Part shown: piece after piece, positions 23,189 through 60,732 of the stretch
Numbering within the stretch: the stretch's first letter is position 1
Layout of the letters: the number at the start of each line of letters is the position of its first letter
From: Macrostomum lignano
Lineage: Eukaryota
Assembly: GCA_002269645.1 (NCBI GenBank)
Contig: NIVC01001208.1
Coordinates: 124,001 to 188,000 of the forward strand
Reading direction: 5' to 3'
DNA: 64,000 nt
The notes under the pieces: generated by a model
Database searches by the model: none
Seen by the model: only the letters and a program-made list of their open reading frames with translations
Told to the model about the DNA's origin: nothing
Position numbers and translations under genes: made by a program

Positions 23189-23299
23189 GTCTGTCTGTCT
23201 GTCTGTCTGTCTGGCTGTGTCTGTCTGGCTGTCTGTCTGGCTGTGTGTCTGTCGTTCTGTCTGTCTGTCTGTCTGTTTGTTTGTCTCTGTCTTTCTGTC

Positions 23300-23349
<50 letters not shown>

Positions 23350-23379
23350 TGTCTGGGTCTGCCTGTCTGTCTGTCTGTC

Positions 23380-23412
<33 letters not shown>

Positions 23413-23507
23413 CTGTGTGTGTCTGTCTGTCCTTCTGTCTGTCTGTGTGTGTCTGTCTGTCTGTCTGTCTGTCTGTGTGTCTGTCTGTCTCTCTGTCTGT
23501 CTGTCTG

Positions 23508-23546
<39 letters not shown>

Positions 23547-23565
23547 GTCTGTCTGTCTGGCTGTG

Positions 23566-23608
<43 letters not shown>

Positions 23609-23685
23609 TTGTCTCTGTCTTTCTGTCTGTCTGTGTGTGTGTGTGTGTGTCTGTCTGTGTCTGTCCACCTGTCTGTCTGTCTGCT
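21440..23685 (+). repeat. 2.25-kb compound (TCTG)n/(TG)n microsatellite with an about 0.95-kb higher-order duplication
   Basis: Rare landmark variants recur at constant offset: ccgtttgttt 21651/22593, ccgtcttcc 22125/23077, cgttctg 22301/23253. Confidence 0.95.
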
Positions 23686-23692
23686 CTATCAG

Positions 23693-27863
<4,171 letters not shown>

Positions 27864-36155: not shown

Positions 36156-36163
36156 AGAACCTT

Positions 36164-40915: not shown

Positions 40916-41769
40916 GTGTCCTGAAATGAATGGAGGCAGAATATACAGAATCAAAGGACACAGAATTTGGCACTACATATTTTTCTATATCTCAGTTGTC
41001 TAGCTTGATTCGCGCTACAAGTCACTAAAAGCAGCTCAGGAAAGAGAAAAATTACAATACGGAACAGGTAAATCACAGCAATAAGCGAACCTTCCATTGT
41101 TTCTTACATCAAAAGGGGATGCTTTTGAGTCCGCACGGGTAAATTGATTGCAGCTTAAAAATAGATTAAGTCTAGATATAGATGGAATATGGATTCAGGT
41201 AATTATTTAGCGCAGCGACTGTTACATGCATGAAATCACAGTGCCTTGCTGGTAGACCCGCAGCCAAGGATAAAAAAGCAATTTTTTGACTGCATTTTTT
41301 TCGACTGTCAAAAACGTTTCCTCCTCTGAAGGCCTGATCAGCAACAAAGGTTGGCTGGCAATTCGAGATTGAATGAGAGAGATAGGCAGGGAGCAAGGCA
41401 GATCAGTTGAGCCCTGAGCAGAATGAAGAGAGTACTGTATACCGTAGATGCCGACGAATGCACAAGGGTTATGGGTGATGGGATCTGCTCCATGCGCTGC
41501 GATTGGATGAATTCTATAGCTATATAACTTGGGATTTTTACCTGCAATTTACTGAGGCTTCTATAGGCGTATTGCAGAAATAAACCAACGTTTAATTTTC
41601 AACCATTCGGCTTCTGAAGTGAATTTGAGATATTTCAAGCCAGGGGTAAGTAGTGTCGTTTTTTCGACAATATTGATACTGCTGATATGAATTACTATTT
41701 CAGATAAAATTAAATGATCTGGGTTAGACTGACAGACGCGGAGTAGGTCAGGGTGTGATAAGGAGAGTC

Positions 41770-43455: not shown

Positions 43456-44009
43456 CACACCCTGCCAGGCCTGACGGGGCCCCACTACAAGTTTGCTCAC
43501 ACTCCAAAAGAAAACCGAAAGCGCGCACAGAGTGGGTGATGGGAATGAGTTAAGGGTGCCTGAACTCAGCCTCCTCCTATCCCCCGTGTGTGCCCGCATA
43601 AATTATTAATGTTAGTCATATAGCGATTACTTACAAACCCTCACTTCCCCCGTATGGATTAATGTCCCGTGAAATTTCCTTCTCCGCTCCCGTATTTATC
43701 CTCCCCCCTTCCAGCCCGCATGAGATTAGCAATGCTTCTAGACAATTATAAGGCCAGGAAAGCACAGTGCAGTTGTCTTTAAACCCGAGTGTTTACATGT
43801 TTTTCTTGAAGCGTGAAAATGCTCTGCCTTACGACTAGCGACTCTGAATTAATGGCTTTCCTAGTTAACTGCATCTCGACCTGATGCAACTTTTTTCTAG
43901 TTTTCAGACGCCTTTTCAGATGGGCTCCTTGCCGTCCCTAGCCCTGCTCATATTCCTTCTCGTCAGGAAAGTGACATTCTTGCCTCTCAATTTTCACTTA
44001 GTTTTCTCT

Positions 44010-44515
44010 TTTACACTCTTCTGTCACTCTCTTCTGTCACTCTCTTCTGTCACTCTCTTCTGTCACTCTCTTCTGTCACTCTCTTCTGTCACTCTCTTCT
44101 GTCACTCTCTTCTGTCACTCTCTTCTGTCACTCTCTTCTGTCACTCTCTTCTGTCACTCTCTTCTGTCTCTCTTGTTTCCCTCTCTCAAGTTTCTGTCTA
44201 ATTCTTTGTGTCGCTCTCTTCACTGTCACTCTCTTCACTGTCACTCTCTTCACTGTCACTCGCTTCACTGTCACTCGCTTCACTGTCACTCTCTTCACTG
44301 TCACTCTCTTCTGTCACTCTCAAGTTTCTGTCTTATTCTTTGTGTCGCTCTATTTACTGCCCCTCTCTTCATTGTCACTCTCTTCACTGTCACTCTCTTC
44401 ATTGTCACTCTCTTCACTGTCACTCTCTTCACTGTCACTCTCTTCACTGTCACTCTCTTCACTGTCACTCTCTACACTGTCACTCTCTTTACTTTCACTC
44501 TCTTCACTGTCACCC
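44010..44515 (+). repeat. 13-bp (cttctgtcactct) then 15-bp (cactgtcactctctt) minisatellites
   Basis: Directly visible; source of the SL/HC-rich spurious ORFs. Confidence 0.95.
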
Positions 44516-44920
44516 TATTGTCTGTCACTCCATTCTGCCACTCTCTATTCAATCACTTTCCCCTTATTTTGCTATCTTCTCTTTCATCAGCCTCCCATAT
44601 CTCCCATTTCCAATTCCCTATGCAGTTCTATTATCCTCATGCACTCCTGCCTTCACTCCTCATCCCCTCACCCACTCTCCCAGCCTCCCAACCATAGTAT
44701 TGTCAGTCAAGCCCTTTGTTATCCTTACCCATACGCAAAGCCGGTCTAAGCCAGTCGCTGCCTCAGGACATGGATGCTTAAGGCTGCGCACTCAGCGCTC
44801 CCCACTATTCTAGCTCAGACAGGGGGGGGGTTAAAATCTGAGACTACGAGACTATCAGCTTCGGCCTTGGCTCTGTTATGCGTAGTTTTTGATACGTTAA
44901 TAAATTATTAATTGCTGGCC

Positions 44921-44958
<38 letters not shown>

Positions 44959-45199
44959 GGTTATTTCTGTCTCCTATTCTTACACCGTTGAGAGTACTGA
45001 GCTCCTACAGAAGTATATGGCTTGACTCTGGCATGCGCGAATAGCGTAAAACTGTAGAGAATTGTATATTACTTTTAATTGATTGTAAAATTCACTAGAA
45101 TGTGTTAAATGCCGTTACTTAAAATGATAAATGATTTTCTTAAAGAACAATTGATTTATAAACAATCAAAAGACAATGGAAAGTTAAGAGAATGAAGAA

Positions 45200-45490
45200 T
45201 TTAGGAAAATTTAGGGAATGAGGTATTTATAGAATTTATGGAGTAGGAAATTTAGAGGATGGAGATTTAGGGGATGGGGAATTTAGGGAATAGGGGATTT
45301 AGGGGATGGAATTTAGGGGATGGGAATTAGGGGATGGGGATTTATGGGGATGGGGAATTTAAAGGATGGGGATTTAGGGGATGGGGATTTAGGGGATGGG
45401 AATTTAGGGAATAGGCGATTTAGGGATAGTGGAATTTAAGGTAGGGAAAATTTACATGTAAGGATTGGGGAATTCAGGGATTGGGGAATT
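45200..45490 (+). repeat. Degenerate G-rich repeat (ggggatttaggggat)
   Basis: Several TTAGGG-containing units with G-runs. Confidence 0.8.
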
Positions 45491-46339
45491 TCAGCAGAAC
45501 AAATTGAGAGACAGTAGCAATCATTGACTGGGGCAGGCATCCACTTTAACTAAGAACTTCGGTGGCAAAATTACGAGCTTAACGTCAACTGCTCTGTCTC
45601 ATCAGCTGGGCAGTGAATGAGGTGTACAAACTTAAGTCTTGGGAGCTGGCAGGTTGGGCTGGATTTACGGAATCGATAGCACAACTCTGCAGAGCTCTAG
45701 CTCATTACTCGGACGCGCTCAGCTAGAGAATATGTGAGTTTGCAGCCACAGCTCGTACAGCCCGTGTCACTCAATATTCATAGACTCGCTCTGGCCTCCT
45801 TCCTCGTGTCGCGCTAAAAGTAAGATCGATCTGAACTCATCCTTCTCTGGCGTGTGTCCGATGCCTTCGATTTGGCAAAGCTTGCACCCACTCTCAAACT
45901 TGGAAAGGTTTTCGTACGCGAAGCTATTGTAGATATTCATCATAACGATTACTCTCTTTTTTCACAGTTTTTATTGAGTCTACTGAATTAGCCTACTGAA
46001 AGTAGCATGCAGAGAAAGTTTCTTAAAAAATTGGAGAGTTTAGTGAGATCTGATCGTCTTTGAAAACACGGATAGCTGCGTTTTCTGCAAGTTTTCTTTA
46101 TCAGTTCAAATTACTGCACGAATTTGAAGACACTTAAAAGAACAAAAATTGCGAATAATTAGCTCGCATCATGCAGAAATTACTGCGGTTATTAAAAGTT
46201 TTTTTAGCAACAAAAAAATAAACACAGTTGAGTCATTAAAACAAATTGGTCTACGAAGGTTTTTGAACGACAACACTCTTAATAGATCAGAAAATAAGGC
46301 TGTGGAAAAGTCACCATCTTCAAATAGTGGGAAAAGGGG

Positions 46340-46705
46340 GTTATGGATGACGTCACTCTCTAAAATTGGAGGATCGGTGGTTTATGGATGACGTCACTCT
46401 CTAAAATTAGAGGATACGTGGTTTATGGATGACGTCACTCTCTAAAATGGGGGTGGTTAATGGATGACGTCACTCTCTAAAATTGGAGGATCGGTGGTTT
46501 ATGGAGTCTACTCATAAACCACCGATATGGAATCTACCCATAAACTACCCATAAACCACCGATCTACCCATAAACCAAATTATGGATGACGTCACTCTCT
46601 AAAATGGGGGTGGTTTATGGATGACGTCACTCTAAAATTGGAGGATCGGTGGTTTATGGATGACGTCGCTCTCTAAAATTGGGGGTGGTCTATGGATGAC
46701 GTCAC
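46340..46705 (+). repeat. 36-41 bp tandem repeat carrying TGACGTCA, interrupted by an inverted segment
   Basis: Unit ggtggtttatggatgacgtcactctctaaaatt(ggaggatc/gg). Confidence 0.9.
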
Positions 46706-46830
46706 TTTGTATAAACTGAAAACAGCGTTGCGAATGATTTCACTCTTGCCTAGTTAGAGAAAGAGGTTAGAGATTACGTCAAAATCTCTATAAATTTGCG
46801 GAGGGCAATTGCAGATGACGTCACAGTCTC

Positions 46831-48030
46831 TCAAATGCTCATGGCGCTGCCCCAGACGGCGCTGCAGCCAGCTACGCAGTACACAAACCAGATGAGCACA
46901 AGTCCCAATCCGCAGGCTAGTAGTGGCCAGAGGATGCAGTGAAACACCTGACCTTGACTGAACTCTCTGCCTCTCAATGCCGAATATTCTTCCCAGCCGT
47001 TAATTGACTCCTTGCGAACGTAGCACTGGAAGCCATTGCCGTCGCTGTACATTGTGGCGTTGAGATTCGCGATCTGGCGGGCATTGAGCAGCTTGTCCTT
47101 GTAGCAGATTCTGGATACGCACTGGAAAAAAGAAAAAAGGAAGTGAAAAAAAAGCTATTAAAGCGCGCTAATTTAGACGGTATTCGCGACAGCACTCGCT
47201 GTTCTCGTTAAAATATCCAATAAATTGATTATATAATAAATAGTATAATTTATAATTTTTAATATATAATATAATATAATATTTAAAAAAACAAGCATGA
47301 TAGTAAAGATAAAAAAGTATTTTCCTAATGAAACTTAAATTCTTTGAAAAAATGATCGGAAAGGCAATATTTTCTATCTTGAAATTTATGCTCTTAAAAT
47401 TACCTAAATGAAAGGCAACGATAATTTTATTAAAATGAGTTAAAAAGTATAAAGCGTCGTACAGTTTTTGTTGTCTTATCATTAGGCTATGTATTATTAT
47501 TACTATTATTATTAGCACAATTGCTGGGTTCAATTCTAGAAACACTTTTCCAGGAAAACTTTTGAACAAAAAAAGTAGCATTAAAACAAAGTATTTAATC
47601 AAAACAAAAAACGTGTTCAAACCTTAGCTGGCAGGGTAGCCTCTGCATAGTAGGTATACATGAGATAGATTGTGGCAACACCAGCATCAGCGAATCCGCT
47701 CGAAGTTCCATTGAAGGTGACTCGAACTGTCAAACACGGAAAACTCGATGGGTCTCTGGAGAACACGTCCTGACAGAACTGATCTCCGGTGTAATAACTC
47801 GATTGGAATTTGCACACTGCAGCCTTGAATTTGTGCTCATTTAAATAGGGCCCAATGATGATGCCCAGGCAGATCATTTCAACTACGAAGCCGAGAGTGA
47901 ACAGGGTGCCACCGAGTAGGTACAGCCACCTGCCGGCGCCCAGAACGATGCAGAACCGATCGCACCGACCGCCCTCTGCTGCTCCTCCAGTTGAACGCCG
48001 ATTTCCTGTCGAGCTTCGATTCTTTGCCAT
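46831..48030 (-). CDS. BK-channel beta-subunit-like protein (KCNMB/CaKB family), paralogue A, about 232 aa
   Basis: Exons 48030-47623 and 47121-46831 (phase 0, GT-AG). TM1, then IIGPYLNEHKFKAAVCKF...FCQ...SSFPCLTVRV, CVSRIC, FQCYVR, FHCILWPLLACGLGLVLIW (TM2). Cys pattern and HxxxWP match vertebrate KCNMB. Confidence 0.8.
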
Positions 48031-48169
48031 GGTTTTAGCCTAGTTTATGGCTCGATTACTCTTGGGAGAGATCGGCTACTGAAAGTATAAGTACAGGCTT
48101 GCTACTATATAAATTTGTTACTTCGGTAAAAAAAGTCACCGTAACAGGTTCAGACCCTCCTGTTAAATC

Positions 48170-48395
48170 GTGAACCTATGGTTCTACCCCTCTGTCGAGT
48201 CGTGAACTTGGGGGTTCTACCCCTCCTGTCGAGTCGTGAACTTGGGGGTTCTACCCCTCGTGTCGAGTTGTGAACTTGGGGGTTCCACCCCTCCTGTCGA
48301 GTCGTGAACTTGGGGGTTCCACCCCTCCTGTCGAGTCGTGAACTTGGGGGTTCCACCCCTCCTGTCGAGTCGTGAACTTGGGGGTTCCAGCCCTC
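48170..48395 (+). repeat. 34-bp minisatellite upstream of paralogue A
   Basis: Unit gtcgagtcgtgaacttgggggttccacccctcct, about 6-7 copies, with an internal GGGG/CCCC stem. Confidence 0.9.
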
Positions 48396-49250
48396 CCATT
48401 GGGCTAGTTCCTACAGCTCCAGTTGAGCCGTGATCCTGAGTTCCGACCTGTCATCGAATCGTATAGAGGGTTCCCAGTCGTATGATCATGACGAGTTGGA
48501 ATATAGCTAACATGAAGGCAAGATATTAGAATCGATCATTTAGCTTCACTTACCGTTTTGTCCTGCTCTCTAAATAGAATCCCGTGCTTTAATTGTTAAT
48601 CCATCTGAGTATGCAAAATCCGTTTTAAAAAAACGTAGCTACTCTTAGAGAATAAAATAACGTTCAAGGCAAAGGAGGCAGAGAGAGAGCCAGAGTTGAA
48701 CACGCGTTGGTTGGTACAGCCCTTGTTAAACCTACTCAAGCCTTATAAATCCGATAGCTAGACCACGGAGCCATGGCTGCACCCGTTTGCTCACAGAAAC
48801 GCTCTCTCTCTCTGTCCCTCTCTAAATCCCAATTGGGATCTTAGGGAGAAGGGAAAACACCGCACAAATAATGCATAGGCCTGAGGGGCATTTTTCTTAT
48901 TCTTATTTCTCTCTCTCTCTCTCTCTCTCTCCGTGAGTGCGGTTTGTTCGAGAGCTGTAATAGAGCTGGAATCAGCGGCATGCAATGGCCGGTCAGAAAT
49001 CTGACACCATAATACGAGTTGAAAATGCGTAGTTCTCTACATGTAACTCAGCTTTGTCCATGCAGAGCTGCATGCCCTGAGCCAAGTGTTGGAACTTGGA
49101 CATTTTTTTACTATCAAATTGGCACAGTTAAAGCAGCTATTGCAATTCATTTTCAACCCAAGTGGCAAAATGCCAAATCAAGTTGTAAATTGTTAATTCA
49201 GAGCTACCAAAAGGCCAAGTGAAGTGCAGCATTCATAGTCATTTCAAGTA

Positions 49251-50410
49251 CGAGGGGTGTCCGGAAAATTCGGACACTTGTAATCCCAGACCAAAAACAG
49301 TAGCAGTTGCAAGCACAACTTTGGTGTCATTTAAAAGCGGCACATCCTTTTCAATGAATTCAGTCGCGTGTATTTTGGTCATTTCTGTCAAAAGTTACGT
49401 GAGAAAAACCATAGCAATGCCATTAATCGATTATATCACTGCCACAAATCCACTAATCCATATGATCGATTATGGATTATCGATCGATTATTGATCACCG
49501 ATTATGGATTATCGATCGATTATTGATCACCGATTATGGATTGTCGATCGATTATTGATCACCGACTATGGATTATCGATCGATTATTGATCACCGATTA
49601 TGGATTATCGATCGATTATTGATCACCGATTATGGATTATCGATCGATTATTGATCACCGATTATGGATTATCGATCGATTATTGATCACCGATTATGGA
49701 TTATCGATCGATTATTGATCACCGATTATGTATTATCGATCGATTATTGATCACCGATTATGGAGTATCGATCGATTATTGATCACCGATTATGGATTAT
49801 CGGTCGATTATTTATCACCGATTATGGATTATCGATCGATTATTGATCACCGATTATGGATTATCGATCGATTATTGATCACCGATTATGGATTATCGAT
49901 CGATTATTGATCACCGATTATGGATTATCGATCGATTATTGATCACCGATTATGGATTATCGATCGATTATTGATCACCGATTATGGATTATCGATCGAT
50001 TATTGATCACCGATTATGGATTATCGATCGATTATTGATCACCGATTATGGATTATCGATCGATTATTGATCACCGATTATGGATTATCGATCGATTATT
50101 GATCACCGATTATGGATTATCGATCGATTATTGATCACCGATTATGGATTATCGATCGATTATTGATCACCGACTATCTCTGATTATTGACACCATCGTG
50201 AGCGTGATGAACGACTAAAATTCATTTTTGAGGACATCGCTTTTTATATATTTTAAACTTTTACAAACATTTTCAGGCATACATTGCGATGGTTTTTTCA
50301 CGTAACTTTTGAAAGAAATGACCAAATTACACTCGACTGAATTCATGGGAAAAATATGTGCCGCTTTGCTCTGGGATTAAAAGTGTCAGAACTTTCCCCG
50401 ACACCCCTCG
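49251..50410. mobile_element. Non-autonomous mariner-type element with long imperfect TIRs and an internal 32-bp satellite
   Basis: TA|CGAGGGGTGTC...GACACCCCTCG|TA. Inverted homology extends about 170 bp on the left (gcggcac, gaattcagtcg, tggtcatttct.tcaaaagttacgtga.aaaaaccat.gcaatg), mirrored at about 50280-50410. Confidence 0.85.
49460..50175 (+). repeat. 32-bp minisatellite (about 22 near-identical units) inside the mariner-type element
   Basis: Unit attatggattatcgatcgattattgatcaccg with the palindrome ATCGATCGAT. Confidence 0.95.
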
Positions 50411-50858
50411 TATAGAAGACTCACTCTTTTCTGTGCAGTTTCTCTTGTGCCCAGCTGCTCCGCCAAGTGCAAGTTGGTTCGGCCTTTTGTATCCATGGTC
50501 GCTATTGCGCAACAGTTGCGCAACAGAAGCGCTCTGATTGGCTAATCTGCAGATCAACTGAATTTTATGCACTTTTGAGTTGGCTATTGTGCTACTTGAC
50601 AGGAAAAAAAACAGACGACGCAATCTACGCCACGCCCGCGTTGCTCATCTTAACTGTGGGTGGGGACAATTCGCGTCACAAAGTCCTAGTTTAGTCTGGT
50701 GAGGAGAGAGCAGCTGAAAGTTATGAGTAGGGTTGGATTAAAGCTGCCACCTGTTGAAATGTATTATGACGATGACATGCAAATATCATTGAAAAGCTAC
50801 CCTGTAACCATTTCAGGTTTTGCTCTGCACCCCATTGACTAAAACAGCGCTAACGGAC

Positions 50859-52307
50859 ATGGCTCTTCGCCGCTGTCACCGCCTCTGCAATGTGATGGGC
50901 ATAGCCAAATACGTTTTTCTTACCTGTGTATCACTAATCACCTGCGGAGTCATAGTTGGCGGTATCCTAGCTTATTTAATCATTCTGCCGTACTACCGAG
51001 AGGCGCGATTCGAGCAGACCAGCTGCGTGTACCTTGGCGAAGAGATGAAGCGTATTATTGACTGCGAAAGCAAGTGCGCCAAGGATAGAAGCAGCTATCC
51101 CTGCTACATGGTCAGGGTCAACATCTCGGGCGTGCCTGAGCAAGGTGTACTGTTTGAAAATTTTCTCACTTATCTGGAGCAAGATAAGGTAACTTTGTTG
51201 AAGAAACTGCACTGTTCAGTTTCTGTTCCTGAAATTGTGAAACATCTAATCTTTGAAAAAATGATATATTCATCAGAGTTGCCTAACGTGTAGGATCCTC
51301 TTTTGTTTCTGTATGAACCTTATTTAAAATTAAACAAGTCTCCGACGAAAAATAAAATACAGGCTAGGTCAGAGAAAAACCTTAAAATCTCTGACCCCCT
51401 GTGTAGTGCGTACACTCACGAATGTACATCTATTTAACGCCAAAGCAAAGCCAATTAACCACCCCCCGGAAATCACTGACGCAGTGACGCTCCATTCTGG
51501 GCCAGACCTGAAAACAATTCTTACCCCCCCTCCCTGCTGCGCCTCCGCCCCCCCCCAATTGAAGAAATGTTTAATGTACATCTAAATATGGGTGGAGAGA
51601 AACCCACTAACTCTCGGACCGCATGTGTACACTCACGAATGTACATCTAGTCAACGCGATAGAAGTCACTGGCGCTCCAATCTGGGCCAGGCCTGAAAAC
51701 AATTCTTACCCCCTGCTGCGCCTCCGCCCCCCCCCCCCACGAAAGTCACTGGCGCTCCAATCTGGGCCAGGCCTGAAAACAATTCTTACCCCCTGCTGCG
51801 CCCCGCCCTCAAATTGAACAAATGTTTAATGTACATTTAAATATAGGCGGAGAGATCCCAACTTTCTGACGGCATGTGTACACTAACGAATGTACATTTA
51901 GAAAAGGGGCAAAAGGCGAAACCAAACCAATTACCCCTGCAAACTCTAACCCCCTACGTACACTCGTTCTAGTCTAAAACAATTATAACCCGGCTGCGCC
52001 TCCACCACCCTTCCAGACAAACTGCAGCTCGGCGCCCTGCCTACCCGAGGCGGTAGAAAACGTGGAAATGACCCGGCGCTACATTAAAACCCTGCGACGT
52101 CGCCGCAATTTCACCTGCTACTTTCGCGGCCCAGACTCTCGCCAGAAGAACTCGGTACTGCTCACTAAGATCTACACAAAAGAGCAGGCTAAGCACTGCG
52201 CCATCTGGCCAGCATTTGCCGTCTCAATTGGCGCCATCGTGCTCATCGGAACTCACTACTGCGCTGGGTGCACCGTGTGGACTCAAGATAAAACTGTTAT
52301 TGCCTGA
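50859..52307 (+). CDS. BK-channel beta-subunit-like protein (KCNMB/CaKB family), paralogue B, about 206 aa
   Basis: Exons 50859-51188 and 52017-52307 (phase 0). IILPYYREARFEQTSCVY...DCESKC...SSYPCYMVRVN...CSSAPC...NFTCY...SVLLTKIY...HCAIWP aligns with KCNMB2 (SQYPCLQVYVN, CSYIPKC, FSCY, SVILTKLY, HSLFWP). Confidence 0.88.
51370..51900 (+). repeat. Degenerate about 220-250 bp direct repeats in the paralogue B intron
   Basis: gtacact(c/a)acgaatgtacat at about 51410, 51627 and 51878; gaaaacaattcttacccc at about 51510, 51695 and 51776. Confidence 0.75.
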
Positions 52308-52624
52308 TCGATGCATAGCAGCTTGATCAGACTGATCGACACTCAATCAATGAACAAGAACAGAAAAAAACAGAAGCACTAGCTATGCATGATGCTGTTG
52401 TCATTTTCTCTATTTTCTCGAAAAATTATTTCATACATTTTACATTTTACAGCAAGAAAATTATCGGCTTAAAAGCGCACAAAAATTTGGTTTTCAATAA
52501 CGAAACGCACCGTCATACTTACATTGATTTAAAGCCTTCTTCTAAGATATTAAATCAATTTGCTTAAATTCTGATAAAATAGCCAAAACATGATCTCTGT
52601 TCCTGACAGTAGTATTATGAGAAT

Positions 52625-55075
52625 TTGACGATCAGACCGACGCTCGATGCCACCTCGACCAGCCTGTCTATCTGGCGCTGGGCGCCTTCAACGGACGAGG
52701 ACAGGAGGGCGAGGTCGTCGGCTGAGCCAAGCACGCTCAGGCGCTTTTCGCCATGGCGGCGACCGATGCGTCTGCGCAGCAGGAAGCCGTCATTAGCCGA
52801 GGGGAGTGCGGTCCGAAGCACCCAGTCCAGCAGCAGCACGAAGAGGAACGGCGCTAGCGTGTCACCCTGCAGAACTCCTGATGAAGTATCGAACAGGTCA
52901 GACCGGCCGTCCGCCGTCACCACAGCAGCTCGAGTATTGCAATACAGCGCCATGACAGCGTCGACTAGCTGCTGGGGTACCCGGTAGGCTCGAAGGACAA
53001 AGGGAAGTGCGGCTCTCAACACCGAGTCAAACGCCTTTCGAAAGTCAACGAAGACAATGATCAGCGTAGACTGGTGGATGCGCGCCTCCTCGATGACACG
53101 GCGGAGTGCGAGGATTTGTGTCACTGTGGCCGGAATCCGTTCTGCTCGTACCGCAGGTACGGGTCCAACACCGACTGCAGACGATCAAGCAGCAGCCGGT
53201 TGAAGAGCTTCGCGGTGCAGGACATCAGCGAAATCCCGCGGTGGTCTTCCTTCCGCGTTGTCCCTGCCTTTTTCGGGATCGGCACGATGTGCGCGACGGT
53301 CCACTTGGTGGGCGCAGGAGCGCCGGCCAGCACGCAGTTCATGACGCCTGTGACCTGGGAGGCCACACAGCGGAGCCGCAGCGCTTCAACCCGGGACTTC
53401 GTCGGGGCCCAGCGCCTTGCCACCTGATGTTTTCCGAGCGAACAGCACAACGTCCTCCGTGGTGACTGGTCTGTGCAGAAGTCCTCCTCAGCTGGGAGCG
53501 GCGTGTCCAGTGGGAGCGCAAAGCTGGCGGGCAGCGGCGACGCGGGCGCGTTCACGATGCCGGCGAAGAAGTCGCGCAATTCATTCCTGCGCTCCTCCGG
53601 GGTGTCGCCGGCCAGGTTCAGCGCCACGCGCTTTTTGCGCCCCGTCAGAGTCCGGACGGCTGTCCACACTGCGCGGCTCTTCACGTCGGGGCCGGCTGCA
53701 GTGATGGACCGAATGGCGTCGTCGACAGCGGCCTGCTGCCGCTCGTCAAGAAGGCGCTCAAATGCGTCTTCAGCGTCGCCCGTGGGCCGCCGGTTTCTGC
53801 GGAGTCGCTCGATGTTGAGCCGCGCCGGCGGCCTGCCTGATGGTCGGGTCGCTCTGCCAGACAGGCAGCGATTTCTGGGCTGGGCGCATCAGCGGGACCG
53901 TCTGCTCTGCAGCGGCTCTAACGGCGGTGCTGATGTTGGAATACTCCACCTCGCGCTGGTATCCAAGCGCGCCGACAAAGGCACCCGCGAATTGATGCTT
54001 CACGCGGGTGTCCAACAGTGCGCGATAGTAGCGCCGTGGCCGCTGCTTTGGCGGTCGGTAGAGCTGGTCGCGGAGCCGCAAGTCGCAGATCAGGAGTCAG
54101 TGGTCTGACCGGAGAGCCAGCGGAGCCATGGTGTCGCAGTTGGTGACGCGGCGGCGCTCGCGAGTGCGAACCAGCGCATGATCGAGTTGCGCCAGTCTCC
54201 TCGTGGCATTCCGCCCGCGTGCGTTCCGCCGCCTTCTCTTGCAGCCCGCAAAGGTGACCAGGCGGGCAGGGGGCTTGCGGAACTGGGTGTTCGTGGACAC
54301 CAGATCCAGCCGGTCAAGCAGGTCCTCCAGCACATCGGTATTGGCGTCCTCCAGCGCAACACGCACAGGTGCACAGGTGCTGACTGTGCCGGCCGACATC
54401 CCAGCGGACCTGACGTGCCGCGGCGCAGACTGGCAGACGACCAAGCTCGCACGCTGCCAGCGGTTCACCTACCTCTGCGGTCTGGTGCCTCACGTGGAAG
54501 AGGACCTCCGGCGGCGCAGGGGACTTGCCTGGGCGGCCTTTCGTTCGATCCGAGCCGTCCTCCAGTCTGAAGCGCTGCCCGACCGCCAGAGGGCTCGGCT
54601 GTGGCAGGCGGTGGTCGAAACGTCCTTCTCTACAACGCCGAGACGTGGACGCTGACGGCTACCCTAGAGCGGCAGCTGAACTCGGCGCATTCAGGGCTGC
54701 TCCGTACGGCCTTTCGAGCTGACGAGAGCGTCGGGACCGAGGCTCTGTACGATCGGGCCAAGCTGCAGCGCCCGTCCACCATCCTGCGCCGGTGGCGACT
54801 TCAACTGGCGGGCCACGTGATCCGGGCCGAGGGCTACTGCCCCCAACCTGTTCAGGACGTCCTGCTGCTCACCTTGCAGGGTCCGTTCAGGCGGGTCAGG
54901 CCCGAACCCGTCGATACGTGGACTGCCTGCTGTGCGACCCTGGGGCATCCGACACTGCCAACGGAGCGGCCGACTTCGTTCGCTCCCAGGCTCTGCGGCG
55001 CGCCATCTGACGCGCCCTGCCCTAACTGTGACTTTGCATGCGGGGTTGCGTATTTTGTTGTTGTTGTTGTTTTTG
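52625..55075. mobile_element. Decayed RTE-like LINE with 5' inversion: 52625-54356 on -, 54357-55075 on +
   Basis: The - segment encodes the EN C-half (QLDHAL, SDH) and RT (QNGFR, DFRKAFDS, QGDTLAPFLF, SADD replacing YADD) with frameshifts. The + segment continues NT..QVLTVPADI to the C-terminus and a (TTG)n tail. Confidence 0.9.
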
Positions 55076-55806
55076 AGCAATTATTGCAATAATCAACCTT
55101 TTTATAACAAAACGAGAGAAGCATGTAGGCAAATAACTGAGAGTGTATTTTACACAAAAATAAATTAAAGTGTCTTGACAGCATTAAATTCCATAATAAA
55201 CCAATATGAATAGAGTGCAAAGGGCTGAAAATGATCTGAAAATGTTGAGACGCGTAGCTGCCTGAGCAGCCAATTAATATAAATTACCAGTTTTAATTTT
55301 ACTAAAGAATCCGAGCATTCATTTCAAGACAATGCCAATCATATTCAACAATATTTCTACTCTTGTCTATGGTCAAAACAGTCTATGGCACAGGCACGAC
55401 ACAGCATTGAATTTAAGACACAGAGCAGTCAAATTCAGACAAGTGCCGCCAATGGAGCTGGAGAGTCCTCCAGACGGATACCATCTACAGAATTGGAGTT
55501 CCCATGGTGCTGCAGAGAATCGCGGAGTCAGGCGTGGATGTCATCCCGGTTGTCAAGAGTGCACCCCGGTTTGCTCACGCACTGCGCTTCCTGACCAGCT
55601 GCTTGGCCCATGAAAATATCTGATTGAGCACACATATGTGGCCTGACAGTTTAGTCACAGTCGCTATAAAATATGTGCATCACAAAATGCCAATTCACTT
55701 TATCACTTGTTCGACTTCTGCGTCACAAATTACGCATTTTTGTCTAAAGGCTCCGAGTTTTAATGTCTGAACCATACATCTTATATACATATGATCTATG
55801 GTCTGA

Positions 55807-58800
55807 TCTGGCAGGACCAAGCGATGGCAGCGGAGCGCCCGTCGGCGTGTTGAGCGCCGGCGTGAGCGGAACCGACGAGGCCGGCTGCGTGGCGCCGCCC
55901 GTCGAGCTGCCGCGCGGGTCCACTCGGATCCTCCGGGTGGCGCCGGGGACCGTGAGGCTCAACTGCATCGAGCCCCAGCCGTACCACAGGGCATGCTTCG
56001 GGTCGGGACGCTGAACTGCCGCACTCTCAAGGCTGCTTGGCGTAGAGGGGTGCTAGCGAAGCTGGCGTACGACCTGAGCTGCGACATCATCTCGCTGCAG
56101 GAGGTGCCTATCAAGGCCGACCCGGGACTTCATTGTGAGGACTTGGGCGCCGGGTGGACCCTCTACTATACTTCTGCGGACCAGCGAGGCCGTGGAGGAG
56201 TTGGAGCGCTGATCGGGCCGAGGCTGCAGCAGAGCTGTCGCTGCGTCTCCCTGTCCCCCCGGTTGCTTCGGATCGACGTCCGGCTACGCGGTCGGAATGC
56301 TCGCCTGTTCTGCGCGTACGCGCCCCCTGCCACACGCCCTGACGAGGCTCAAGAGTTTTTCGAGCAGCTCTCAGCGCAGGTAGAGGCGACGGCGCAGCGT
56401 GACACAGCGGTCGCCCTCGGAGACCTGAACGCAGTCCTGCGTAGGTCCGAGAGGTCGCTGTTCGTGACGCCACGCGGGAACAACAACACCGAGGCACTGG
56501 AGGACTTCCTGGAGAGGCAGGACATGGTGTCGGCCAACACCCGCTTCCGCAAGCCACTGAGCGGTCTCGCAACCTTCGTGGGCTGCAAGCGGAGGCGACG
56601 GAACGCGCGTGGCAGGAACGCAACCCGGAGACAAGCACAGCTCGACCACGTGCTCGTGCGTTTCCGTGAGCGTCGTCGCGCCGTCAACTGCCGCACCATC
56701 ACGCCGCTGGCTCTGCGGTCCGATCACCGGCTCCTCATCTGCGACCTCAACCTTCGCGATCCGCTCTACCGTCCGCCGAAGCGGCCACCGCGGCGCTACT
56801 ACCGCGCGCTTAGAGCCACCGATACGCAGCGTCGCTTTGCTAGCGCCTTTAACACCGCGCTGGGCGACAAGCGTGGAAGTGCCGAGTATGCGATAGTGTG
56901 CGCTGCAGTCAGAACCGCCGCGGAGCAAGCAGTCCCGATGATGCAACCGGCTCAACGTGGGCAGCCGGTCTGGCAGGACGACCCTGCGATTCAGGCAGCG
57001 AGGGAAGATCTGGAGAAGCTCCGCCTGAGCAGGCGACCAACCCGCGAGGCAGAGGCAGCTCTGGCAGCTGTCTACCTGCAGCGCCAACAAGCGGCTGTCG
57101 ATGACGCCATTCAGGCTGTCTATGCCGCTGGGCCCGATGCCAGAGGGCGCGTGGCCTGGTCCGCCATCAACGCTCTGACGGGACGAAAGCGGCGAAATCC
57201 GCTGAACCTGGCTGGTGACACTCCGGACGAGCGTAGGAACGAGCTGCGCGAGTTCTTCGCCGCCATCGTCAACGCGCCGCCACCCCCGCTGCCAGACAGT
57301 CTGACGCTGCCGCCGGAGACGCCGTTGCCGGCAGAGGAGAGTTTCAGCGTAGCCCCAGTCAACGCAGCCGACGTTGTCAAGCTCGCCCAGCAGTCACCGG
57401 GCGGGAAAGCGCTGGGTCTGGACGAGGTGCCCATCGAGGCGATGCGCATCCCCTGTGTGGCCGCTGAGGTCGCCAGAGTGATGAACCGCGTGCTCTTCGG
57501 TGAGGCGGCGCCCAACGAATGGACCACGGCGCACATCGTCGCTGTTCCAAAGAAGCCGGGCACCACTAGGCTTGAAGACCATCGAGGCATCTGCCTTCAG
57601 TCCTGTGCAGCGAAGCTGTTCAACCGGATGCTGCTTTCGCGGTTGCAGCCCGTGCTGGATCCGTACCTGCGCCCAGAGCAGAACGGGTTCCGGCCCCATC
57701 GCGGCACAGTGGCGCAGATCCTGGCTCTTCGCCGAGTCATCGAGGAGGCGCGGATTCGTCAGTCGATACTGATTTTAATCTTTATTGATTTCAAGAAGGC
57801 ATTCGACTCGGTTGTCAGAGCCGTGCTTCCAATGGTGCTCCGCGCGTACAACGTGCCTGAGCAGCTGATCTCCGCCGTCATGGCGATGTACCGTGATACG
57901 ACAGCTGCTGTGACAACACTGGACGGCCTATCGGACTCCTTTGAGACATCCTCCGGAGTGCTTCAGGGAGATACGCTGGCGCCGTTTCTGTTCGTCCTGG
58001 TGCTTGACTGGGTGCTGCGGACTGCTCTTCCTACCGACGACGACGGTTTTCTGCTGCAGCGACGCGTGGGTCAACGTCAACCGGAGAAGCGGCTCAGCGT
58101 GCTTGGCTACGCCGACGACCTCGCCCTGCTGTCCTCGACCGTCGAGGGCGCCCAACGGCAGCTGGACAGGCTGGTTGCCGTTGCGGCGAGTGTCGGCCTG
58201 GTGGTCAACACGCAGAAGACCGTTGTGCTCTGCGTGCCGGACGACATCGAGGCTGCAATATTTTGCCGAGGCGCTGACGGGCAGGCGACCGAACTCCCGC
58301 GATGTCAGCAGTTCATCTACCTCGGCGGTCTGGTTCCAGACGCTCGCGAGGACCTGCGACGCCGCCGCGGGCTTGCCTGGGCTGCCTTTCGTTCTGTGAG
58401 GGCAGTCCTGCAGTCCGAGGCCCTACCGGACCGCCAGAGGGCGGCGCTGTTCCAGGCGGTAATCGAGACCGTCCTGCTGTACAACGCCGAGACCTGGACG
58501 CTGACGGACTCACTCGAACAGCAAGTCGATGCGGCGCACGCTGGTCTGCTGCGCGCCGCCTTCAACATCGGCGTCGAGCGAGTCACCAACGCGGCACTCT
58601 ATCGCCGCGCTGGCCTGCCACGTCCAAGTGATCTACTGCGCCGTCGGCGACTCCAGCTCGCAGGCCATCTCATCCGCGCCGAGTCGTACTGCCCACAGCC
58701 GGTGCAGGAGGTGCTGCTGCTCACGCTGCAGGCACCCTACCGGCGAGGTCAAGCGCGAACTCGGCGTTATGTCGACTGTCTGCTGGCTGACGCCGGCGCC

Positions 58801-58905
58801 CCGGACACTGCCGGTGGCGCGGCCTTTGTTCGCGCCCAAGCCATGAAGCGCGCCCTGTGACGCTGACTTTTACCATCATGACAGCGTATTTTGTTGTTGT
58901 TGTTG
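55807..58905 (+). mobile_element. Intact RTE-clade-like non-LTR retrotransposon with a 10-bp TSD
   Basis: TSD TATGGTCTGA at 55797-55806 and 58906-58915; (TTG)n tail; a single uninterrupted EN-RT ORF. Confidence 0.93.
55993..58860 (+). CDS. AP-endonuclease plus reverse-transcriptase polyprotein (955 aa)
   Basis: EN motifs GTLNCRTL, LQEV, AYAP, LGDLNA, QLDH, SDH; RT motifs QNGFR, FIDFKKAFDSV, QGDTLAPFLF, YADD. The true start could lie further upstream. Confidence 0.92.
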   Translation: MLRVGTLNCRTLKAAWRRGVLAKLAYDLSCDIISLQEVPIKADPGLHCEDLGAGWTLYYTSADQRGRGGVGALIGPRLQQSCRCVSLSPRLLRIDVRLRGRNARLFCAYAPPATRPDEAQEFFEQLSAQVEATAQRDTAVALGDLNAVLRRSERSLFVTPRGNNNTEALEDFLERQDMVSANTRFRKPLSGLATFVGCKRRRRNARGRNATRRQAQLDHVLVRFRERRRAVNCRTITPLALRSDHRLLICDLNLRDPLYRPPKRPPRRYYRALRATDTQRRFASAFNTALGDKRGSAEYAIVCAAVRTAAEQAVPMMQPAQRGQPVWQDDPAIQAAREDLEKLRLSRRPTREAEAALAAVYLQRQQAAVDDAIQAVYAAGPDARGRVAWSAINALTGRKRRNPLNLAGDTPDERRNELREFFAAIVNAPPPPLPDSLTLPPETPLPAEESFSVAPVNAADVVKLAQQSPGGKALGLDEVPIEAMRIPCVAAEVARVMNRVLFGEAAPNEWTTAHIVAVPKKPGTTRLEDHRGICLQSCAAKLFNRMLLSRLQPVLDPYLRPEQNGFRPHRGTVAQILALRRVIEEARIRQSILILIFIDFKKAFDSVVRAVLPMVLRAYNVPEQLISAVMAMYRDTTAAVTTLDGLSDSFETSSGVLQGDTLAPFLFVLVLDWVLRTALPTDDDGFLLQRRVGQRQPEKRLSVLGYADDLALLSSTVEGAQRQLDRLVAVAASVGLVVNTQKTVVLCVPDDIEAAIFCRGADGQATELPRCQQFIYLGGLVPDAREDLRRRRGLAWAAFRSVRAVLQSEALPDRQRAALFQAVIETVLLYNAETWTLTDSLEQQVDAAHAGLLRAAFNIGVERVTNAALYRRAGLPRPSDLLRRRRLQLAGHLIRAESYCPQPVQEVLLLTLQAPYRRGQARTRRYVDCLLADAGAPDTAGGAAFVRAQAMKRAL

Positions 58906-58924
58906 TATGGTCTGAACTCAACTG

Positions 58925-59530
58925 GTTAATGTCTTAAATACTCTCCCCATACACGGTTTTAGCCATAGACAATCGTGAAAGCGTGGGTTGAATATGGTTA
59001 GTCCTAGCCGTGTCTTATATTCAATGGATCTCCCCATACACGGTTATGGCCATAGACTATCGTCGAAGCGGTGGGTTGAATACATGGATGAATGAATAGA
59101 ATGGATTGCTATTCTGGCTCTGGCTATTTTCGTTTTTGACTCTTTTGCATCCGGTTCCCCCCGTGCCTTTTCATTGGTTGATGATTGCCATAGACAATTT
59201 TCGGCCTTCGCCCCTTTCTTTCGATGCACAAGCGCAAAGAACTGATTTTATTGTAGACGAATCGACTCTCGAATCGTGCTTGTAGGTCTTCCCCCTTTAT
59301 TTCAAAACACGAGCGAAAGCGCTTGTGCATCGAAAGAAAGGGGCGAAGGCCGAAAATTGTCTATGGCAATCATCAACCAATGAAAGGCACGGGGGGGAAC
59401 CGGATGCAAAAGAGTCAAAAACGAAAATAGCCAGAGCCAGAATAGCAATCCATTCTATTCATTCATCCATGGTTGAATATGGCCATGTCTTAAATTGAAT
59501 GCTTACCCAATACACGGTTTTGCCCATTGA
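58925..59530 (+). repeat. Three degenerate about 95-bp tandem units, interrupted by a MITE
   Basis: tgtctta...cc(c/a)atacacggtt.t.gcc.at.gac recurring at about 58930, 59010 and 59485. Confidence 0.7.
59083..59471. mobile_element. Fold-back MITE (hAT-like by its 8-bp TSD)
   Basis: About 153-bp arms 59083-59235 and 59319-59471, differing only in two homopolymer lengths; 83-bp loop; TSD GTTGAATA at 59075-59082 and 59472-59479; termini CATGG/CCATG. Confidence 0.88.
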
Positions 59531-59732
59531 CATTCTCAGCGGGCGGTCTGTCTGCTGTGCGTTCCAGCTTCGACATATTCAGGCATAGCAACTTAACACG
59601 CATTGAATGCATGCAACATGTATGAATTAAGCTTTCGTCGTAATACCAAAGATCAGAATTATCTCTATATGACCAAATCCAAAGGTCTAATATAAATGAG
59701 CAATCTACTCAACTCGTAGTTCTACTGGCTAT

Positions 59733-60732
59733 TCAGGCAATAACAGTTTTATCCTTAGTCCAAACGGTGCACCCAGCGCAGTAGTGAGTTCCGATGAGCA
59801 CGATGGCGCCAATTGAGACAGCAAATGCTGGCCAGATGGCGCAGTGCTTAGCCTGCTCTTTTGTGTAGATCTTAGTGAGCAGCACCGATCTCTTGGGGTC
59901 AGTGTTGTCGTCACCTCGATAATAGCAGGTGAAGTTTCTTCTATGCCTCAGGGTGCGAATGTAGCGCTGGGTCATCTCTACGTTCTCCGTTGGCTCTGGC
60001 AGACAGGGCGAGGAACTGCAGCCCTCCTGATTGGGGCGGAGTTGAGGGGTAGGAAAATTCAAACGACCTGAATGTACATTTAGGGGTAGAGGGAGGCCAG
60101 AAGTGTACAGTAAGGGTTTGAAATAGCTCATATGTACAGCGAAAGGCAGAGATCGAGAGACCGATGATGCGCAGTGAAGTTTGGAAAGGGAATGTATGTA
60201 CATTTGGAAAGAATGATGATGTACAGTGAAGGGCAGAAGGGAATGTACATAGATAAAGGGCAGAGAGACGCACCGTAATGTGCTCATTGAAGAGGGTGTT
60301 TCTGTTCATTCGGAGGAAGGTTTTTAGAAAGATAGTGACCTGAGTATGTACAACAGTTTGGCTGAAATTATTCGTTTGTACACACACCTCGTACACGTCG
60401 GAAAACGTCAAGTAGTTCTCAAACAGAGTTCCAGCTGTTGACAGACCAGACACGTTGACCCGAACAACGTAGCATGGGAATCTGCACTTCTCCTTCTTGC
60501 ACAAGTAGCCATAGCTTTCCCGTTGGTTGCGCATGCAATAGTGCAAATCTTCGCCAAGATATTCGCAGCTGGTCGGTTGAAATTGCGACTCGCGATAGTA
60601 CGGCAATATGATGAGATAGGCAAGGATGCTGGACACTATTAAACCGCAGGCGATCAACGATACGCAGGTGAGGAATACAATCTTTGCCAAGCCGATGACG
60701 TTGCAAAGTTTGTGGCATCTGCGTAAAGCCAT
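59733..60732 (-). CDS. BK-channel beta-subunit-like protein (KCNMB/CaKB family), paralogue C, about 212 aa
   Basis: Exons 60732-60388 and 60026-59733 (phase 0). MALRRCHKLCNVIGLAK...IILPYYRESQFQPTSCEY...FPCYVVRVN / EGCSSSPC...NFTCYY...SVLLTKIY...HCAIWP; clear paralogue of B. Confidence 0.88.

What the first reader, a model, noticed from the sequence alone, without database searches (positions are those of the whole stretch)
46831..60732. Cluster of three BK-beta (KCNMB/CaKB)-like genes in an invertebrate
Seen: three two-exon, two-TM genes with a phase-0 intron at the equivalent position and KCNMB loop motifs ((Y/F)PC..V.V, C....C, F.CY, H...WP). All three add a post-TM2 YC..GC..W motif. A and B are head-to-head; B and C are tail-to-tail. 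Established: KCNMB1-4 are characterised in vertebrates, flies and C. elegans lack recognised orthologues, and insects have the related, clustered TipE/TEH sodium-channel auxiliary subunits. Inference: this is an uncharacterised invertebrate auxiliary-subunit cluster that may bridge Slo-beta and TipE, with unknown partner channel (Slo1 or Nav). Automated annotations may already label such proteins.
Basis: partly seen in the sequence, partly recalled or inferred. Interest (0 to 1): 0.75.

Follow-up and report, generated by a model that had tools for sequence, protein, structure and literature searches.

The report
Flatworm BK-beta-like gene cluster
Three neighbouring genes in this Macrostomum lignano (flatworm) window are real, intact members of the BK potassium-channel beta-subunit family, but that family is already found and labelled across animals, so this is a sound annotation and not a new kind of gene.

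Summary
Three genes, each with two coding exons, lie at 46831-60732. They are A (minus strand, 232 aa), B (plus, 206 aa) and C (minus, 212 aa). All three match Pfam CaKB (PF03185) above its threshold (46-69 bits against 25.1). The predicted structures of A and B match only human BK beta4 chains.

The phase-0 intron next to the loop C-x4-C motif also occurs in Schistosoma, a nemertean, Nematostella and a fish beta4-like gene.

The organism is Macrostomum lignano. B is 99% identical to GenBank BOX15_Mlig013936g3, a transcript-based model with the same splice junction. A and C are not annotated in the near-identical public copy, but both are intact there.

No TipE signal was found, so the "bridge to TipE" idea is unsupported. 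The family is not new in invertebrates. [quoted passage not shown] A 2012 survey lists KCNMB2 and KCNMA1 homologues in M. lignano.

Slo1 is the most likely partner. Schistosomes reportedly lack Nav1 and Nav2 yet keep at least three related paralogue groups.

Minor new points are the cluster layout, 3' gene conversion between B and C, a conserved cytoplasmic tail (C-x-V-W...DKTVIA) and a polymorphic retrotransposon. Interest is low to moderate.

The parts
47623..48030 (-). Gene A, coding exon 1: N-terminus, TM1 and the first part of the extracellular loop (136 codons). The donor GT is at 47622-47621.
   Evidence: The exon is intact and 99.5% identical in the public copy L001.
46831..47121 (-). 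Gene A, coding exon 2: starts at the C-x4-C motif (CVSRIC), then the rest of the loop, TM2, the YCVAGCSAVW motif and the stop codon.
   Evidence: AlphaFold2 gave pLDDT 88, and Foldseek's top hits were all Slo1-beta4 chains.
41556..41645 (+). Upstream non-coding exon of gene B (5' end not defined). Its GT donor at 41646 is spliced to an acceptor at 50815-50816.
   Evidence: The transcript-based GenBank model P0001 spans L001 10001-22324. It was mapped to the window. The annotation method is described in PMC5730564.
50817..51188 (+). Gene B, exon 2. The CDS starts at the ATG at 50859 (MALRRCH...) and covers TM1 and the first part of the loop. The donor is GTAACT.
   Evidence: P0001 is 99% identical and has the same junction.
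52017..52307 (+). Gene B, last coding exon: TNCSSAPC..., TM2, YCAGCTVW and the DKTVIA C-terminus with the stop codon.
   Evidence: AlphaFold2 gave pLDDT 93, and Foldseek matched 6v22_E at E 3.9e-14.
60388..60732 (-). Gene C, coding exon 1 (115 codons). The donor is GTGTGT.
   Evidence: The exon is intact in L001. No gene is called there in the public annotation.
59733..60026 (-). Gene C, coding exon 2: EGCSSSPC..., TM2, YCAGCTVW and the DKTVIA C-terminus with the stop codon.
52135..52307 (.). One arm of an inverted repeat, 93% complementary to 59733-59905. It covers the last 57 codons of B and of C. It is the likely gene-conversion tract between the two convergent paralogues.
   Evidence: Repeat I3. 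The synonymous difference (pS) is 0.11 in this tract and 0.76 in exon 1.
55810..58905 (+). Full-length non-LTR retrotransposon between B and C. It has one 955-aa ORF at 55993-58860 with endonuclease and reverse-transcriptase domains. It is absent from the public copy, and about 13 nt is duplicated at the insertion site.
52615..55100 (.). Older, broken fragments of related retrotransposons in both orientations. They are present in both copies of the locus.
   Evidence: ORFs; repeats I1, I2, D7 and D9; colinearity.
48153..50304 (.). A-B intergenic region with a 34-nt tandem array (48153-48424) and a 32-nt tandem array (49333-50304).
   Evidence: Families D1 and D3.

Best explanation
The window comes from Macrostomum lignano. 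It holds a 14-kb cluster of three intact paralogous genes of the CaKB (BK-channel beta subunit, KCNMB-like) family. Each protein has a short cytoplasmic N-terminus, TM1, an extracellular loop of about 115-125 residues with conserved cysteines, TM2, and a short cytoplasmic tail.

The most likely function is inferred, not shown. They probably act as auxiliary subunits of the flatworm Slo1 (KCNMA1-type) Ca2+- and voltage-activated K+ channel. By analogy with human beta4, up to four copies would assemble per channel. The TM helices would pack against the voltage-sensor domains, and the loops would sit over the outer pore. This would tune gating, surface expression and access of extracellular blockers.

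The cluster arose by local duplication. An A-type/B-type gene pair is old within Macrostomum, because a second pair (P0005 + P0003) sits at another locus. C is an inverted duplicate of B, and its 3' end has been homogenised with B by gene conversion. The gap between B and C was later filled by retrotransposons.
For: Shown by tool results:
- Pfam CaKB matches of 46.4, 68.8 and 57.1 bits against a cut-off of 25.1.
- 72 of 74 full-length relatives match CaKB.
- The AlphaFold2 models are confident (pLDDT 93 and 88). Their ten best PDB matches are all human Slo1-beta4 or beta2N-beta4 chains (E 4e-14 and 2e-11, TM 0.56-0.66). The next best hits are at E >= 0.02.
- The loop cysteines are conserved.
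- The phase-0 intron directly before C-x4-C is shared with Schistosoma japonicum, Tubulanus, Nematostella and a fish beta4-like gene.
- B is 99% identical to the RNA-seq-derived GenBank model BOX15_Mlig013936g3 and has the same junction (PMC5730564).
- All three CDS are intact in a second copy that is 95-98% identical overall, with only 2-5 nucleotide differences per CDS.
- dN/dS between B and C is 0.20.
- A paralogous A'-B' pair occurs on three other contigs.

Support for Slo1 as partner:
- M. lignano transcripts homologous to KCNMA1 and KCNMB2 are listed in PMC3447372.
- Schistosoma is reported to lack Nav1, and flatworms to lack Nav2 (PMC6259924). Schistosomes nevertheless keep at least three paralogue groups (P0007, P0008, P0009). 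These fall in the same flatworm clade (69% bootstrap).
Against: - No functional data were found for any non-vertebrate CaKB protein in five literature searches.
- The flatworm proteins form their own clade and are not orthologues of a particular KCNMB1-4, so their effect on the channel cannot be predicted.
- Slo1 works without CaKB proteins in flies and nematodes, so the pairing is not obligatory.
- A and C have no transcript-based model in the public annotation of the near-identical copy, and A had no hit in the 5.8-billion-protein collection. Their expression is therefore unproven.
- The neighbour-joining tree rests on 193 columns and is only moderately supported.
Confidence: 0.6

Rival explanations
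1. The proteins, or some paralogues such as the divergent A type, work like insect TipE/TEH. They would be auxiliary subunits of the Nav1 sodium channel that free-living flatworms possess, and not of Slo1.
For: Li et al. 2011 (PMC3240667) argue that TipE-like and Slo-beta subunits share an ancestor and that partner choice is lineage-specific. Free-living flatworms have Nav1 (PMC6259924). A and A' form a separate, fast-evolving lineage that lacks the DKTVIA tail.
Against: No TipE (Pfam) match appeared for A, B or C at E<=10, or for any of 74 relatives at E<=0.01. No EGF-like or extended loop was found. Schistosomes are reported to lack Nav1 and Nav2 but retain several members of the same flatworm clade. 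A direct profile comparison with TipE sequences could not be run.
Confidence: 0.1
2. The proteins partner with a different channel, for example a Slo2/KCNT-type channel or another K+ channel. Alternatively, they act independently of any channel as small cysteine-rich membrane glycoproteins.
For: The family occurs in sponges and cnidarians. It has expanded independently in several phyla. Partner specificity is known only for vertebrates. The conserved spiralian tail C-x-V-W..DKTVIA has no counterpart in vertebrate beta subunits and suggests lineage-specific interactions.
Against: The only experimentally established partner of this fold is Slo1, seen in the structures 6v22 and 9cz*. A KCNMA1 homologue is listed for M. 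lignano.
Confidence: 0.2
3. A and/or C are unexpressed or decaying duplicates, and B is the only working gene of the cluster.
For: Only B carries a transcript-based gene model in the near-identical GenBank copy. Neither A nor C appears in the protein collection. The neighbourhood is rich in transposons and tandem repeats.
Against: Both are full-length with canonical splice sites and no stop or frameshift in two copies of the locus. Those copies differ by 2-5% in flanking DNA but by only 2-3 nucleotides in each CDS. dN/dS between B and C is 0.20. A models confidently as a beta4-like fold. The deposited annotation excluded transcripts overlapping repeats and low-expression transcripts (PMC5730564), so absence there is weak evidence.
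Confidence: 0.1

Closest known systems
Vertebrate BK-channel beta subunits KCNMB1-4 (Pfam CaKB PF03185; human beta4 in PDB 6v22 and 6v35)
   Same: They share the two-TM topology, loop length, conserved loop cysteines, the (Y/F)PC..V.V, C-x4-C, F.C(Y/F) and H...WP motifs, and the predicted fold (TM 0.56-0.66). They also share a phase-0 intron directly before C-x4-C.
   Different: Sequence identity is only about 20-22%. The flatworm proteins form a separate clade with no 1:1 orthology to beta1-4. They have no beta2-type inactivation ball. They have two coding exons, against four in the fish beta4-like gene examined. They carry an extra cytoplasmic motif, C-x-V-W, plus a fixed-length tail ending DKTVIA. 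Any effect on Slo1 is untested.
[quoted passage not shown]
   Same: They belong to the same clade (69% bootstrap). They share the two-coding-exon structure with the intron before C-x4-C and the C-x-V-W..D(K/Q)(T/D)VI(A/V) C-terminus. B is the same gene as BOX15_Mlig013936g3.
   Different: In M. lignano the genes are clustered, with three in the window and two at a second locus. No neighbour was found within 10 kb in S. japonicum. A and C are not annotated in the public copy. The A type has a diverged tail and lacks one loop cysteine.
Insect TipE/TEH1-4 sodium-channel auxiliary subunits (TipE gene cluster)
   Same: They share the two-TM plus disulphide-loop architecture and a proposed common ancestry with Slo-beta. 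Both are genomically clustered paralogues, with some genes nested in introns (PMC3240667). Here A is nested in B's first intron.
   Different: There is no detectable TipE profile match and no EGF-like loop domain. TipE's partner is Para Nav. The flatworm clade persists in schistosomes, which are reported to lack Nav channels.

Membership tests
CaKB / BK-channel beta subunit (KCNMB-like, Pfam PF03185) | Match to the family profile above the curated threshold | tested here: met
   A scored 46.4 bits, B 68.8 and C 57.1, against a cut-off of 25.1. Each match covers nearly the whole profile.
CaKB / BK-channel beta subunit (KCNMB-like, Pfam PF03185) | Two transmembrane helices flanking one extracellular loop of about 120 residues, with both termini cytoplasmic | tested here: met
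   In the AlphaFold2 models the long helices are at residues 15-48 and 165-197 in B and at 32-65 and 192-225 in A, with a beta-rich domain between them. Orientation is inferred from the beta4 match.
CaKB / BK-channel beta subunit (KCNMB-like, Pfam PF03185) | Conserved loop cysteines (disulphide framework) and the PC..V.V, C-x4-C, F.C and H...WP motifs | tested here: met
   Invariant or near-invariant columns C56, C69, C82, C113, C118 and C144 (B numbering) across 74 sequences. A lacks the second Cys of the C-x3-C pair.
CaKB / BK-channel beta subunit (KCNMB-like, Pfam PF03185) | Three-dimensional fold of a solved BK beta subunit | tested here: met
   Against the PDB, the top 10 Foldseek hits for both A and B are hSlo1-beta4 or beta2N-beta4 chains (E 4e-14 and 2e-11, TM 0.56-0.66). 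The next hits are at E >= 0.02.
CaKB / BK-channel beta subunit (KCNMB-like, Pfam PF03185) | Shared gene structure (phase-0 intron immediately before the C-x4-C motif) | tested here: met
   The position is the same in S. japonicum, Tubulanus, Nematostella, a fish beta4-like gene, A and A'. It is shifted by 2-3 codons in B, C and B'.
CaKB / BK-channel beta subunit (KCNMB-like, Pfam PF03185) | Physical assembly with Slo1 and modulation of its gating, expression or pharmacology | not testable with these tools
   Only indirect evidence exists. A KCNMA1 homologue is listed for M. lignano (PMC3447372), and relatives are retained in schistosomes that lack Nav.
CaKB / BK-channel beta subunit (KCNMB-like, Pfam PF03185) | Orthology to one particular vertebrate subunit (beta1, beta2, beta3 or beta4) | tested here: not met
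   In the neighbour-joining tree, the flatworm sequences form their own clade, sister to the nemertean sequences. The vertebrate subunits cluster separately. No KcnmB2_inactiv domain was found in A, B or C.
TipE/TEH sodium-channel auxiliary subunits (Pfam TipE) | Match to the TipE family profile | tested here: not met
   CaKB was the only family reported for A, B and C at E<=10. None of the 74 relatives matched TipE at E<=0.01. HMMER filters drop most matches above E of about 0.1, so a very weak similarity is not excluded.
TipE/TEH sodium-channel auxiliary subunits (Pfam TipE) | Extended loop, with EGF-like domains in TEH3/4 | tested here: not met
   The loops are 115-125 residues and no other Pfam domain was found.
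TipE/TEH sodium-channel auxiliary subunits (Pfam TipE) | Modulation of a Para-type Nav1 channel | not testable with these tools
   The comparative argument against this is that clade members persist in Schistosoma, which is reported to lack Nav1 and Nav2.

The most novel reading that the evidence does not exclude
Spiralian CaKB proteins (flatworm, nemertean and some annelid) would form a distinct subfamily. It is defined by a conserved cytoplasmic module after TM2: a juxtamembrane Cys in C-x-V-W, plus a fixed-length tail ending D-K-T-V-I-A-COOH. This module would link the subunit to a lineage-specific scaffold or trafficking partner. Within the Macrostomum cluster, the divergent A type, which has lost that tail, would have switched partner. 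One candidate is the Nav1 channel of free-living flatworms. That would give a living example of the Slo-beta to TipE-like functional shift proposed by Li et al. 2011.
Probability: 0.07. Interest if true: 0.7.

Novelty: new member of a known kind. Interest (0 to 1): 0.27.

Why it matters
BK beta subunits have been studied functionally almost only in vertebrates, and the classical invertebrate models (fly, C. elegans) lack them. A transgenic, RNAi-amenable flatworm with several beta-like genes would allow a direct test of what the ancestral subunit did and which channel it served. Close relatives exist in schistosomes and tapeworms, so the family could also matter for understanding excitability in parasitic flatworms. 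As a sequence finding, though, it is a correct family assignment and a modest annotation improvement (two unannotated paralogues and the cluster layout). It is not a discovery of a new system.

Tried and rejected
- Searching the 5.8-billion-protein collection with A found nothing. Searching with the 74-sequence profile found only 5 proteins. The word index limits this tool, and the exhaustive representative search was what gave the family.
- I could not obtain TipE/TEH sequences with the tools. No profile-profile comparison or joint phylogeny with TipE was made, and I did not write such sequences from memory.
- An exact look-up of P0003 found no contig. Its locus was recovered by tblastn in the loci fetched for P0005.
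- The bacterial-type promoter/terminator scan of the A-B intergenic region has no bearing on a eukaryote. It only picked up the 32-nt tandem repeat.
- A Pfam scan of a raw genomic stretch for the claudin-like gene failed because of stop codons and was not pursued.
- A first bootstrap tree run timed out. It was replaced by a faster neighbour-joining run with Kimura-corrected distances and 200 replicates. No maximum-likelihood program was available.
- I considered that the N-terminal C-x3-C and the post-TM2 cysteines could form a four-cysteine metal site. I rejected this as a general feature because only one post-TM2 Cys is conserved across flatworms. Palmitoylation of that Cys is the more ordinary guess and is untested.
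- Five literature searches found no functional study of a non-vertebrate CaKB protein.

Full report
**What is in the sequence**

The ORF list and the DNA reads let me build three gene models, which were checked by translation.

| Gene | Strand | Coding exon 1 | Coding exon 2 | Length |
|---|---|---|---|---|
| A | minus | 48030..47623 | 47121..46831 | 232 aa |
| B | plus | 50859..51188 | 52017..52307 | 206 aa |
| C | minus | 60732..60388 | 60026..59733 | 212 aa |

Each intron is phase 0 with GT..AG boundaries. The post-TM2 motif is looser than written: YCVAGCSAVW in A and YCAGCTVW in B and C. A tblastn scan finds no further copy elsewhere in the window.

**Family membership**

- Pfam reports CaKB (PF03185) as the only family for all three proteins, at 46.4, 68.8 and 57.1 bits against a cut-off of 25.1. 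No TipE match appears even at E<=10.
- A direct sequence search of the PDB with A gives only weak matches to beta2/beta4 (E 0.03-0.06).
- Structure prediction is clearer. AlphaFold2 with family alignments gives pLDDT 93 for B and 88 for A, with two long helices flanking a beta-rich loop domain.
- In both cases the ten best Foldseek matches in the PDB are human Slo1-beta4 or beta2N-beta4 chains (E 4e-14 and 2e-11, TM 0.56-0.66). After those, nothing scores better than E 0.02.
- The loop cysteines are invariant or nearly so across 74 relatives.

**Organism and existing annotation**

B is 99% identical over its full length to GenBank [quoted passage not shown], which has the same exon junction. 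That protein is encoded on contig NIVC01002305.1. The fetched stretch (L001) is colinear with window 32528-64000 at 95-98% identity. The window is therefore a second copy of the same M. lignano locus. It could be an allele, a recent duplicate or another assembly. The published assembly is known to hold 180 Mb of blocks that are at least 95% identical (PMC5730564).

The GenBank annotation was derived purely from RNA-seq and transcriptome assemblies, so the B junction has transcript support. That model also has an upstream non-coding exon, at window 41556-41645, spliced to 50817. This places gene A antisense inside B's first intron.

A and C have no gene model in L001, and A has no hit in the large protein collection. 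All three coding sequences are nevertheless intact in L001 and differ from the window by only 2-5 nucleotides. dN/dS between B and C is 0.20.

**How widespread the family is**

An exhaustive profile search of 1.84 billion representative proteins found 192 relatives at E<=0.001. Of 74 full-length sequences, 72 match CaKB and none matches TipE. Source names show the family across many animal groups:

[quoted passage not shown] Also tapeworms (Hymenolepis, Taenia, Anoplocephala, Schistocephalus, Sparganum).
- Other spiralians: a nemertean (Tubulanus) and annelids (Owenia, Paralvinella, Lamellibrachia).
- Deuterostomes: amphioxus, a hemichordate and a crinoid.
- Early-branching animals: Nematostella and Stylophora ("beta-4" and "beta-4-like") and the sponge Corticium ("beta-4-like").

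A 2012 survey of M. lignano ion-channel transcripts already lists homologues of KCNMB2 and KCNMA1 (PMC3447372).

**Gene structure as an independent marker**

A phase-0 intron directly before C-x4-C is found in all of these genes:

- Schistosoma japonicum: KLLG|CATSAC.
- Tubulanus: GTKN|CSFSRC.
- Nematostella: EEE|CSVAPC.
- A fish beta4-like gene: LNPK|CSYVPPC.
- M. lignano A, and its paralogue A': STSK|CSSRIC.

This is an old family-wide intron and not a peculiarity of the cluster.

**History of the cluster**

M. lignano has a second locus, present on three contigs, that carries an A-like gene (P0005, 48% identical to A) and a B-like gene (P0003, 58% identical to B). They lie 4 kb apart on the same strand. 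In a neighbour-joining tree:

- A and A' group with 100% bootstrap.
- B, C, B' and a further paralogue (P0004) also group with 100% bootstrap.
- All flatworm sequences form a clade with 69% support, next to the nemertean sequences.
- Vertebrate KCNMB sequences cluster apart.

So these are lineage-specific expansions and not orthologues of beta1-4.

B and C are convergent. Their last 173 coding bases are 93% identical (inverted repeat I3). Synonymous difference there is 0.11, against 0.76 in exon 1. That points to gene conversion at the 3' ends.

The 7.4 kb between B and C is almost entirely retrotransposon sequence. Older broken copies lie at 52615-55100. One full-length element lies at 55810-58905, with a 955-aa ORF that has endonuclease and reverse-transcriptase domains. 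This full-length element and a 388-nt hairpin-like insert (59083-59470) are absent from L001, and about 13 nt is duplicated at the site.

No neighbouring CaKB gene was found within 10 kb in S. japonicum or Tubulanus. Nematostella has two within 10 kb.

**Likely function**

The only experimentally known role of this fold is as a Slo1 auxiliary subunit. M. lignano has a KCNMA1 homologue according to PMC3447372. Fux et al. 2018 state that Nav1 is lacking in Schistosoma and that Nav2 is lacking in flatworms (PMC6259924). Schistosomes still keep at least three paralogue groups from the same clade.

I therefore put about 0.6 on Slo1 modulation, 0.1 on a Nav role for some paralogues, and 0.2 on another partner or role. 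Separately, I give 0.1 to A and/or C being silent duplicates. None of this is shown experimentally, and five literature searches found no functional study of a non-vertebrate member.

**A lineage-specific feature**

Among the relatives that include TM2, 32 carry C-x(1-2)-[VIAPL]-W shortly after TM2. Most of these end 8-10 residues later in D-K-T-V-I-A or a close variant. Those whose source could be identified are flatworm or nemertean. Vertebrate, cnidarian and sponge members lack it.

B and C have the full motif. A and A' keep the Cys...W part but have diverged tails (GSAMSI, PKEMAV). Palmitoylation of the cysteine, and a hydrophobic C-terminal docking or export signal, are plausible but untested.

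**Verdict**

The family assignment is correct. The TipE-bridge idea is not supported. The genes are new members (two of them unannotated) of a known, widely distributed and already labelled family.

Noticed in passing
window 55810-58905, and 59083-59470: A full-length non-LTR retrotransposon (955-aa ORF with endonuclease and RT domains) and a 388-nt insert made of a 97% inverted repeat are present in the window. Both are absent from the otherwise 95-98% identical public copy NIVC01002305.1. About 13 nt is duplicated at the retrotransposon site. This looks like a recent, polymorphic insertion.
   Followed up: partly
window about 23693-27700, minus strand: A two-pore-domain (K2P-like) potassium-channel gene. 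ORF 23693-24445 matches Pfam Ion_trans_2 (84 bits) and has a TIGLGDFVP pore motif. An upstream exon ORF (24709-25755) contains TTIGEGT. Long low-complexity repeats are embedded in the region.
   Followed up: partly
window 13201-13890 and 15903-16610, plus strand: Exons of a HID1/dymeclin-family gene. The Pfam Hid1 match is 255 bits for the first ORF. The second ORF carries a long poly-Q tract.
   Followed up: partly
window about 36300-38200, minus strand (equivalent to L001 4880-6684): The public annotation places a 281-aa gene with a Claudin_2-family (PF13903) hit here, upstream of the cluster. I did not build a model of it in the window.
   Followed up: no
window 41556-50816: According to the transcript-based model of the public copy, gene A lies antisense inside the 9.2-kb first intron of gene B. 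This recalls the intron-nested TipE-family genes of insects, but it may be coincidence or a read-through transcript.
   Followed up: partly
L002 10001-16503 (also L003 and L004; M. lignano contigs NIVC01002654, NIVC01002729 and NIVC01003352): A second CaKB locus with an A-like gene (P0005) and a B-like gene (P0003) in tandem on the same strand, 4 kb apart. It is present in three near-identical copies.
   Followed up: partly
C-termini of A, B, C and relatives (proteins P0003-P0137): There is a conserved post-TM2 motif C-x-V-W and a fixed-length tail ending DKTVIA, DQDVIV or similar in flatworm and nemertean members. An N-terminal juxtamembrane C-x3-C (RCHRLC, RCDRFC) is also seen in the Macrostomum proteins. 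Both are absent from vertebrate beta subunits.
   Followed up: partly
Database names of relatives: Several flatworm CaKB proteins carry names that look wrong. The UniRef entry in the P0005 cluster is named 'Calcium channel, voltage-dependent, gamma subunit 3b'. A mis-spliced B model (P0002) is named 'WSC domain-containing protein'. Schistosoma P0009-group entries are named 'Glycoprotein' and 'Anoctamin'.
   Followed up: no
L007 1-607 and 10001-11225 (Nematostella vectensis OW051991.1): Two CaKB genes lie within 10 kb of each other in divergent orientation, separated by an inositol-phosphatase-family gene. Local clustering of this family is therefore not unique to Macrostomum.
   Followed up: no
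window 10600-11900, 15400-17200, 19000-24100, 26200-27600, 34800-36200, 41750-43460 and 44000-44800: Very long tandem and low-complexity arrays produce spurious ORFs of hundreds of codons, and GC and AT skew swings strongly across them. These arrays also differ in copy number between the window and the public copy.
   Followed up: no
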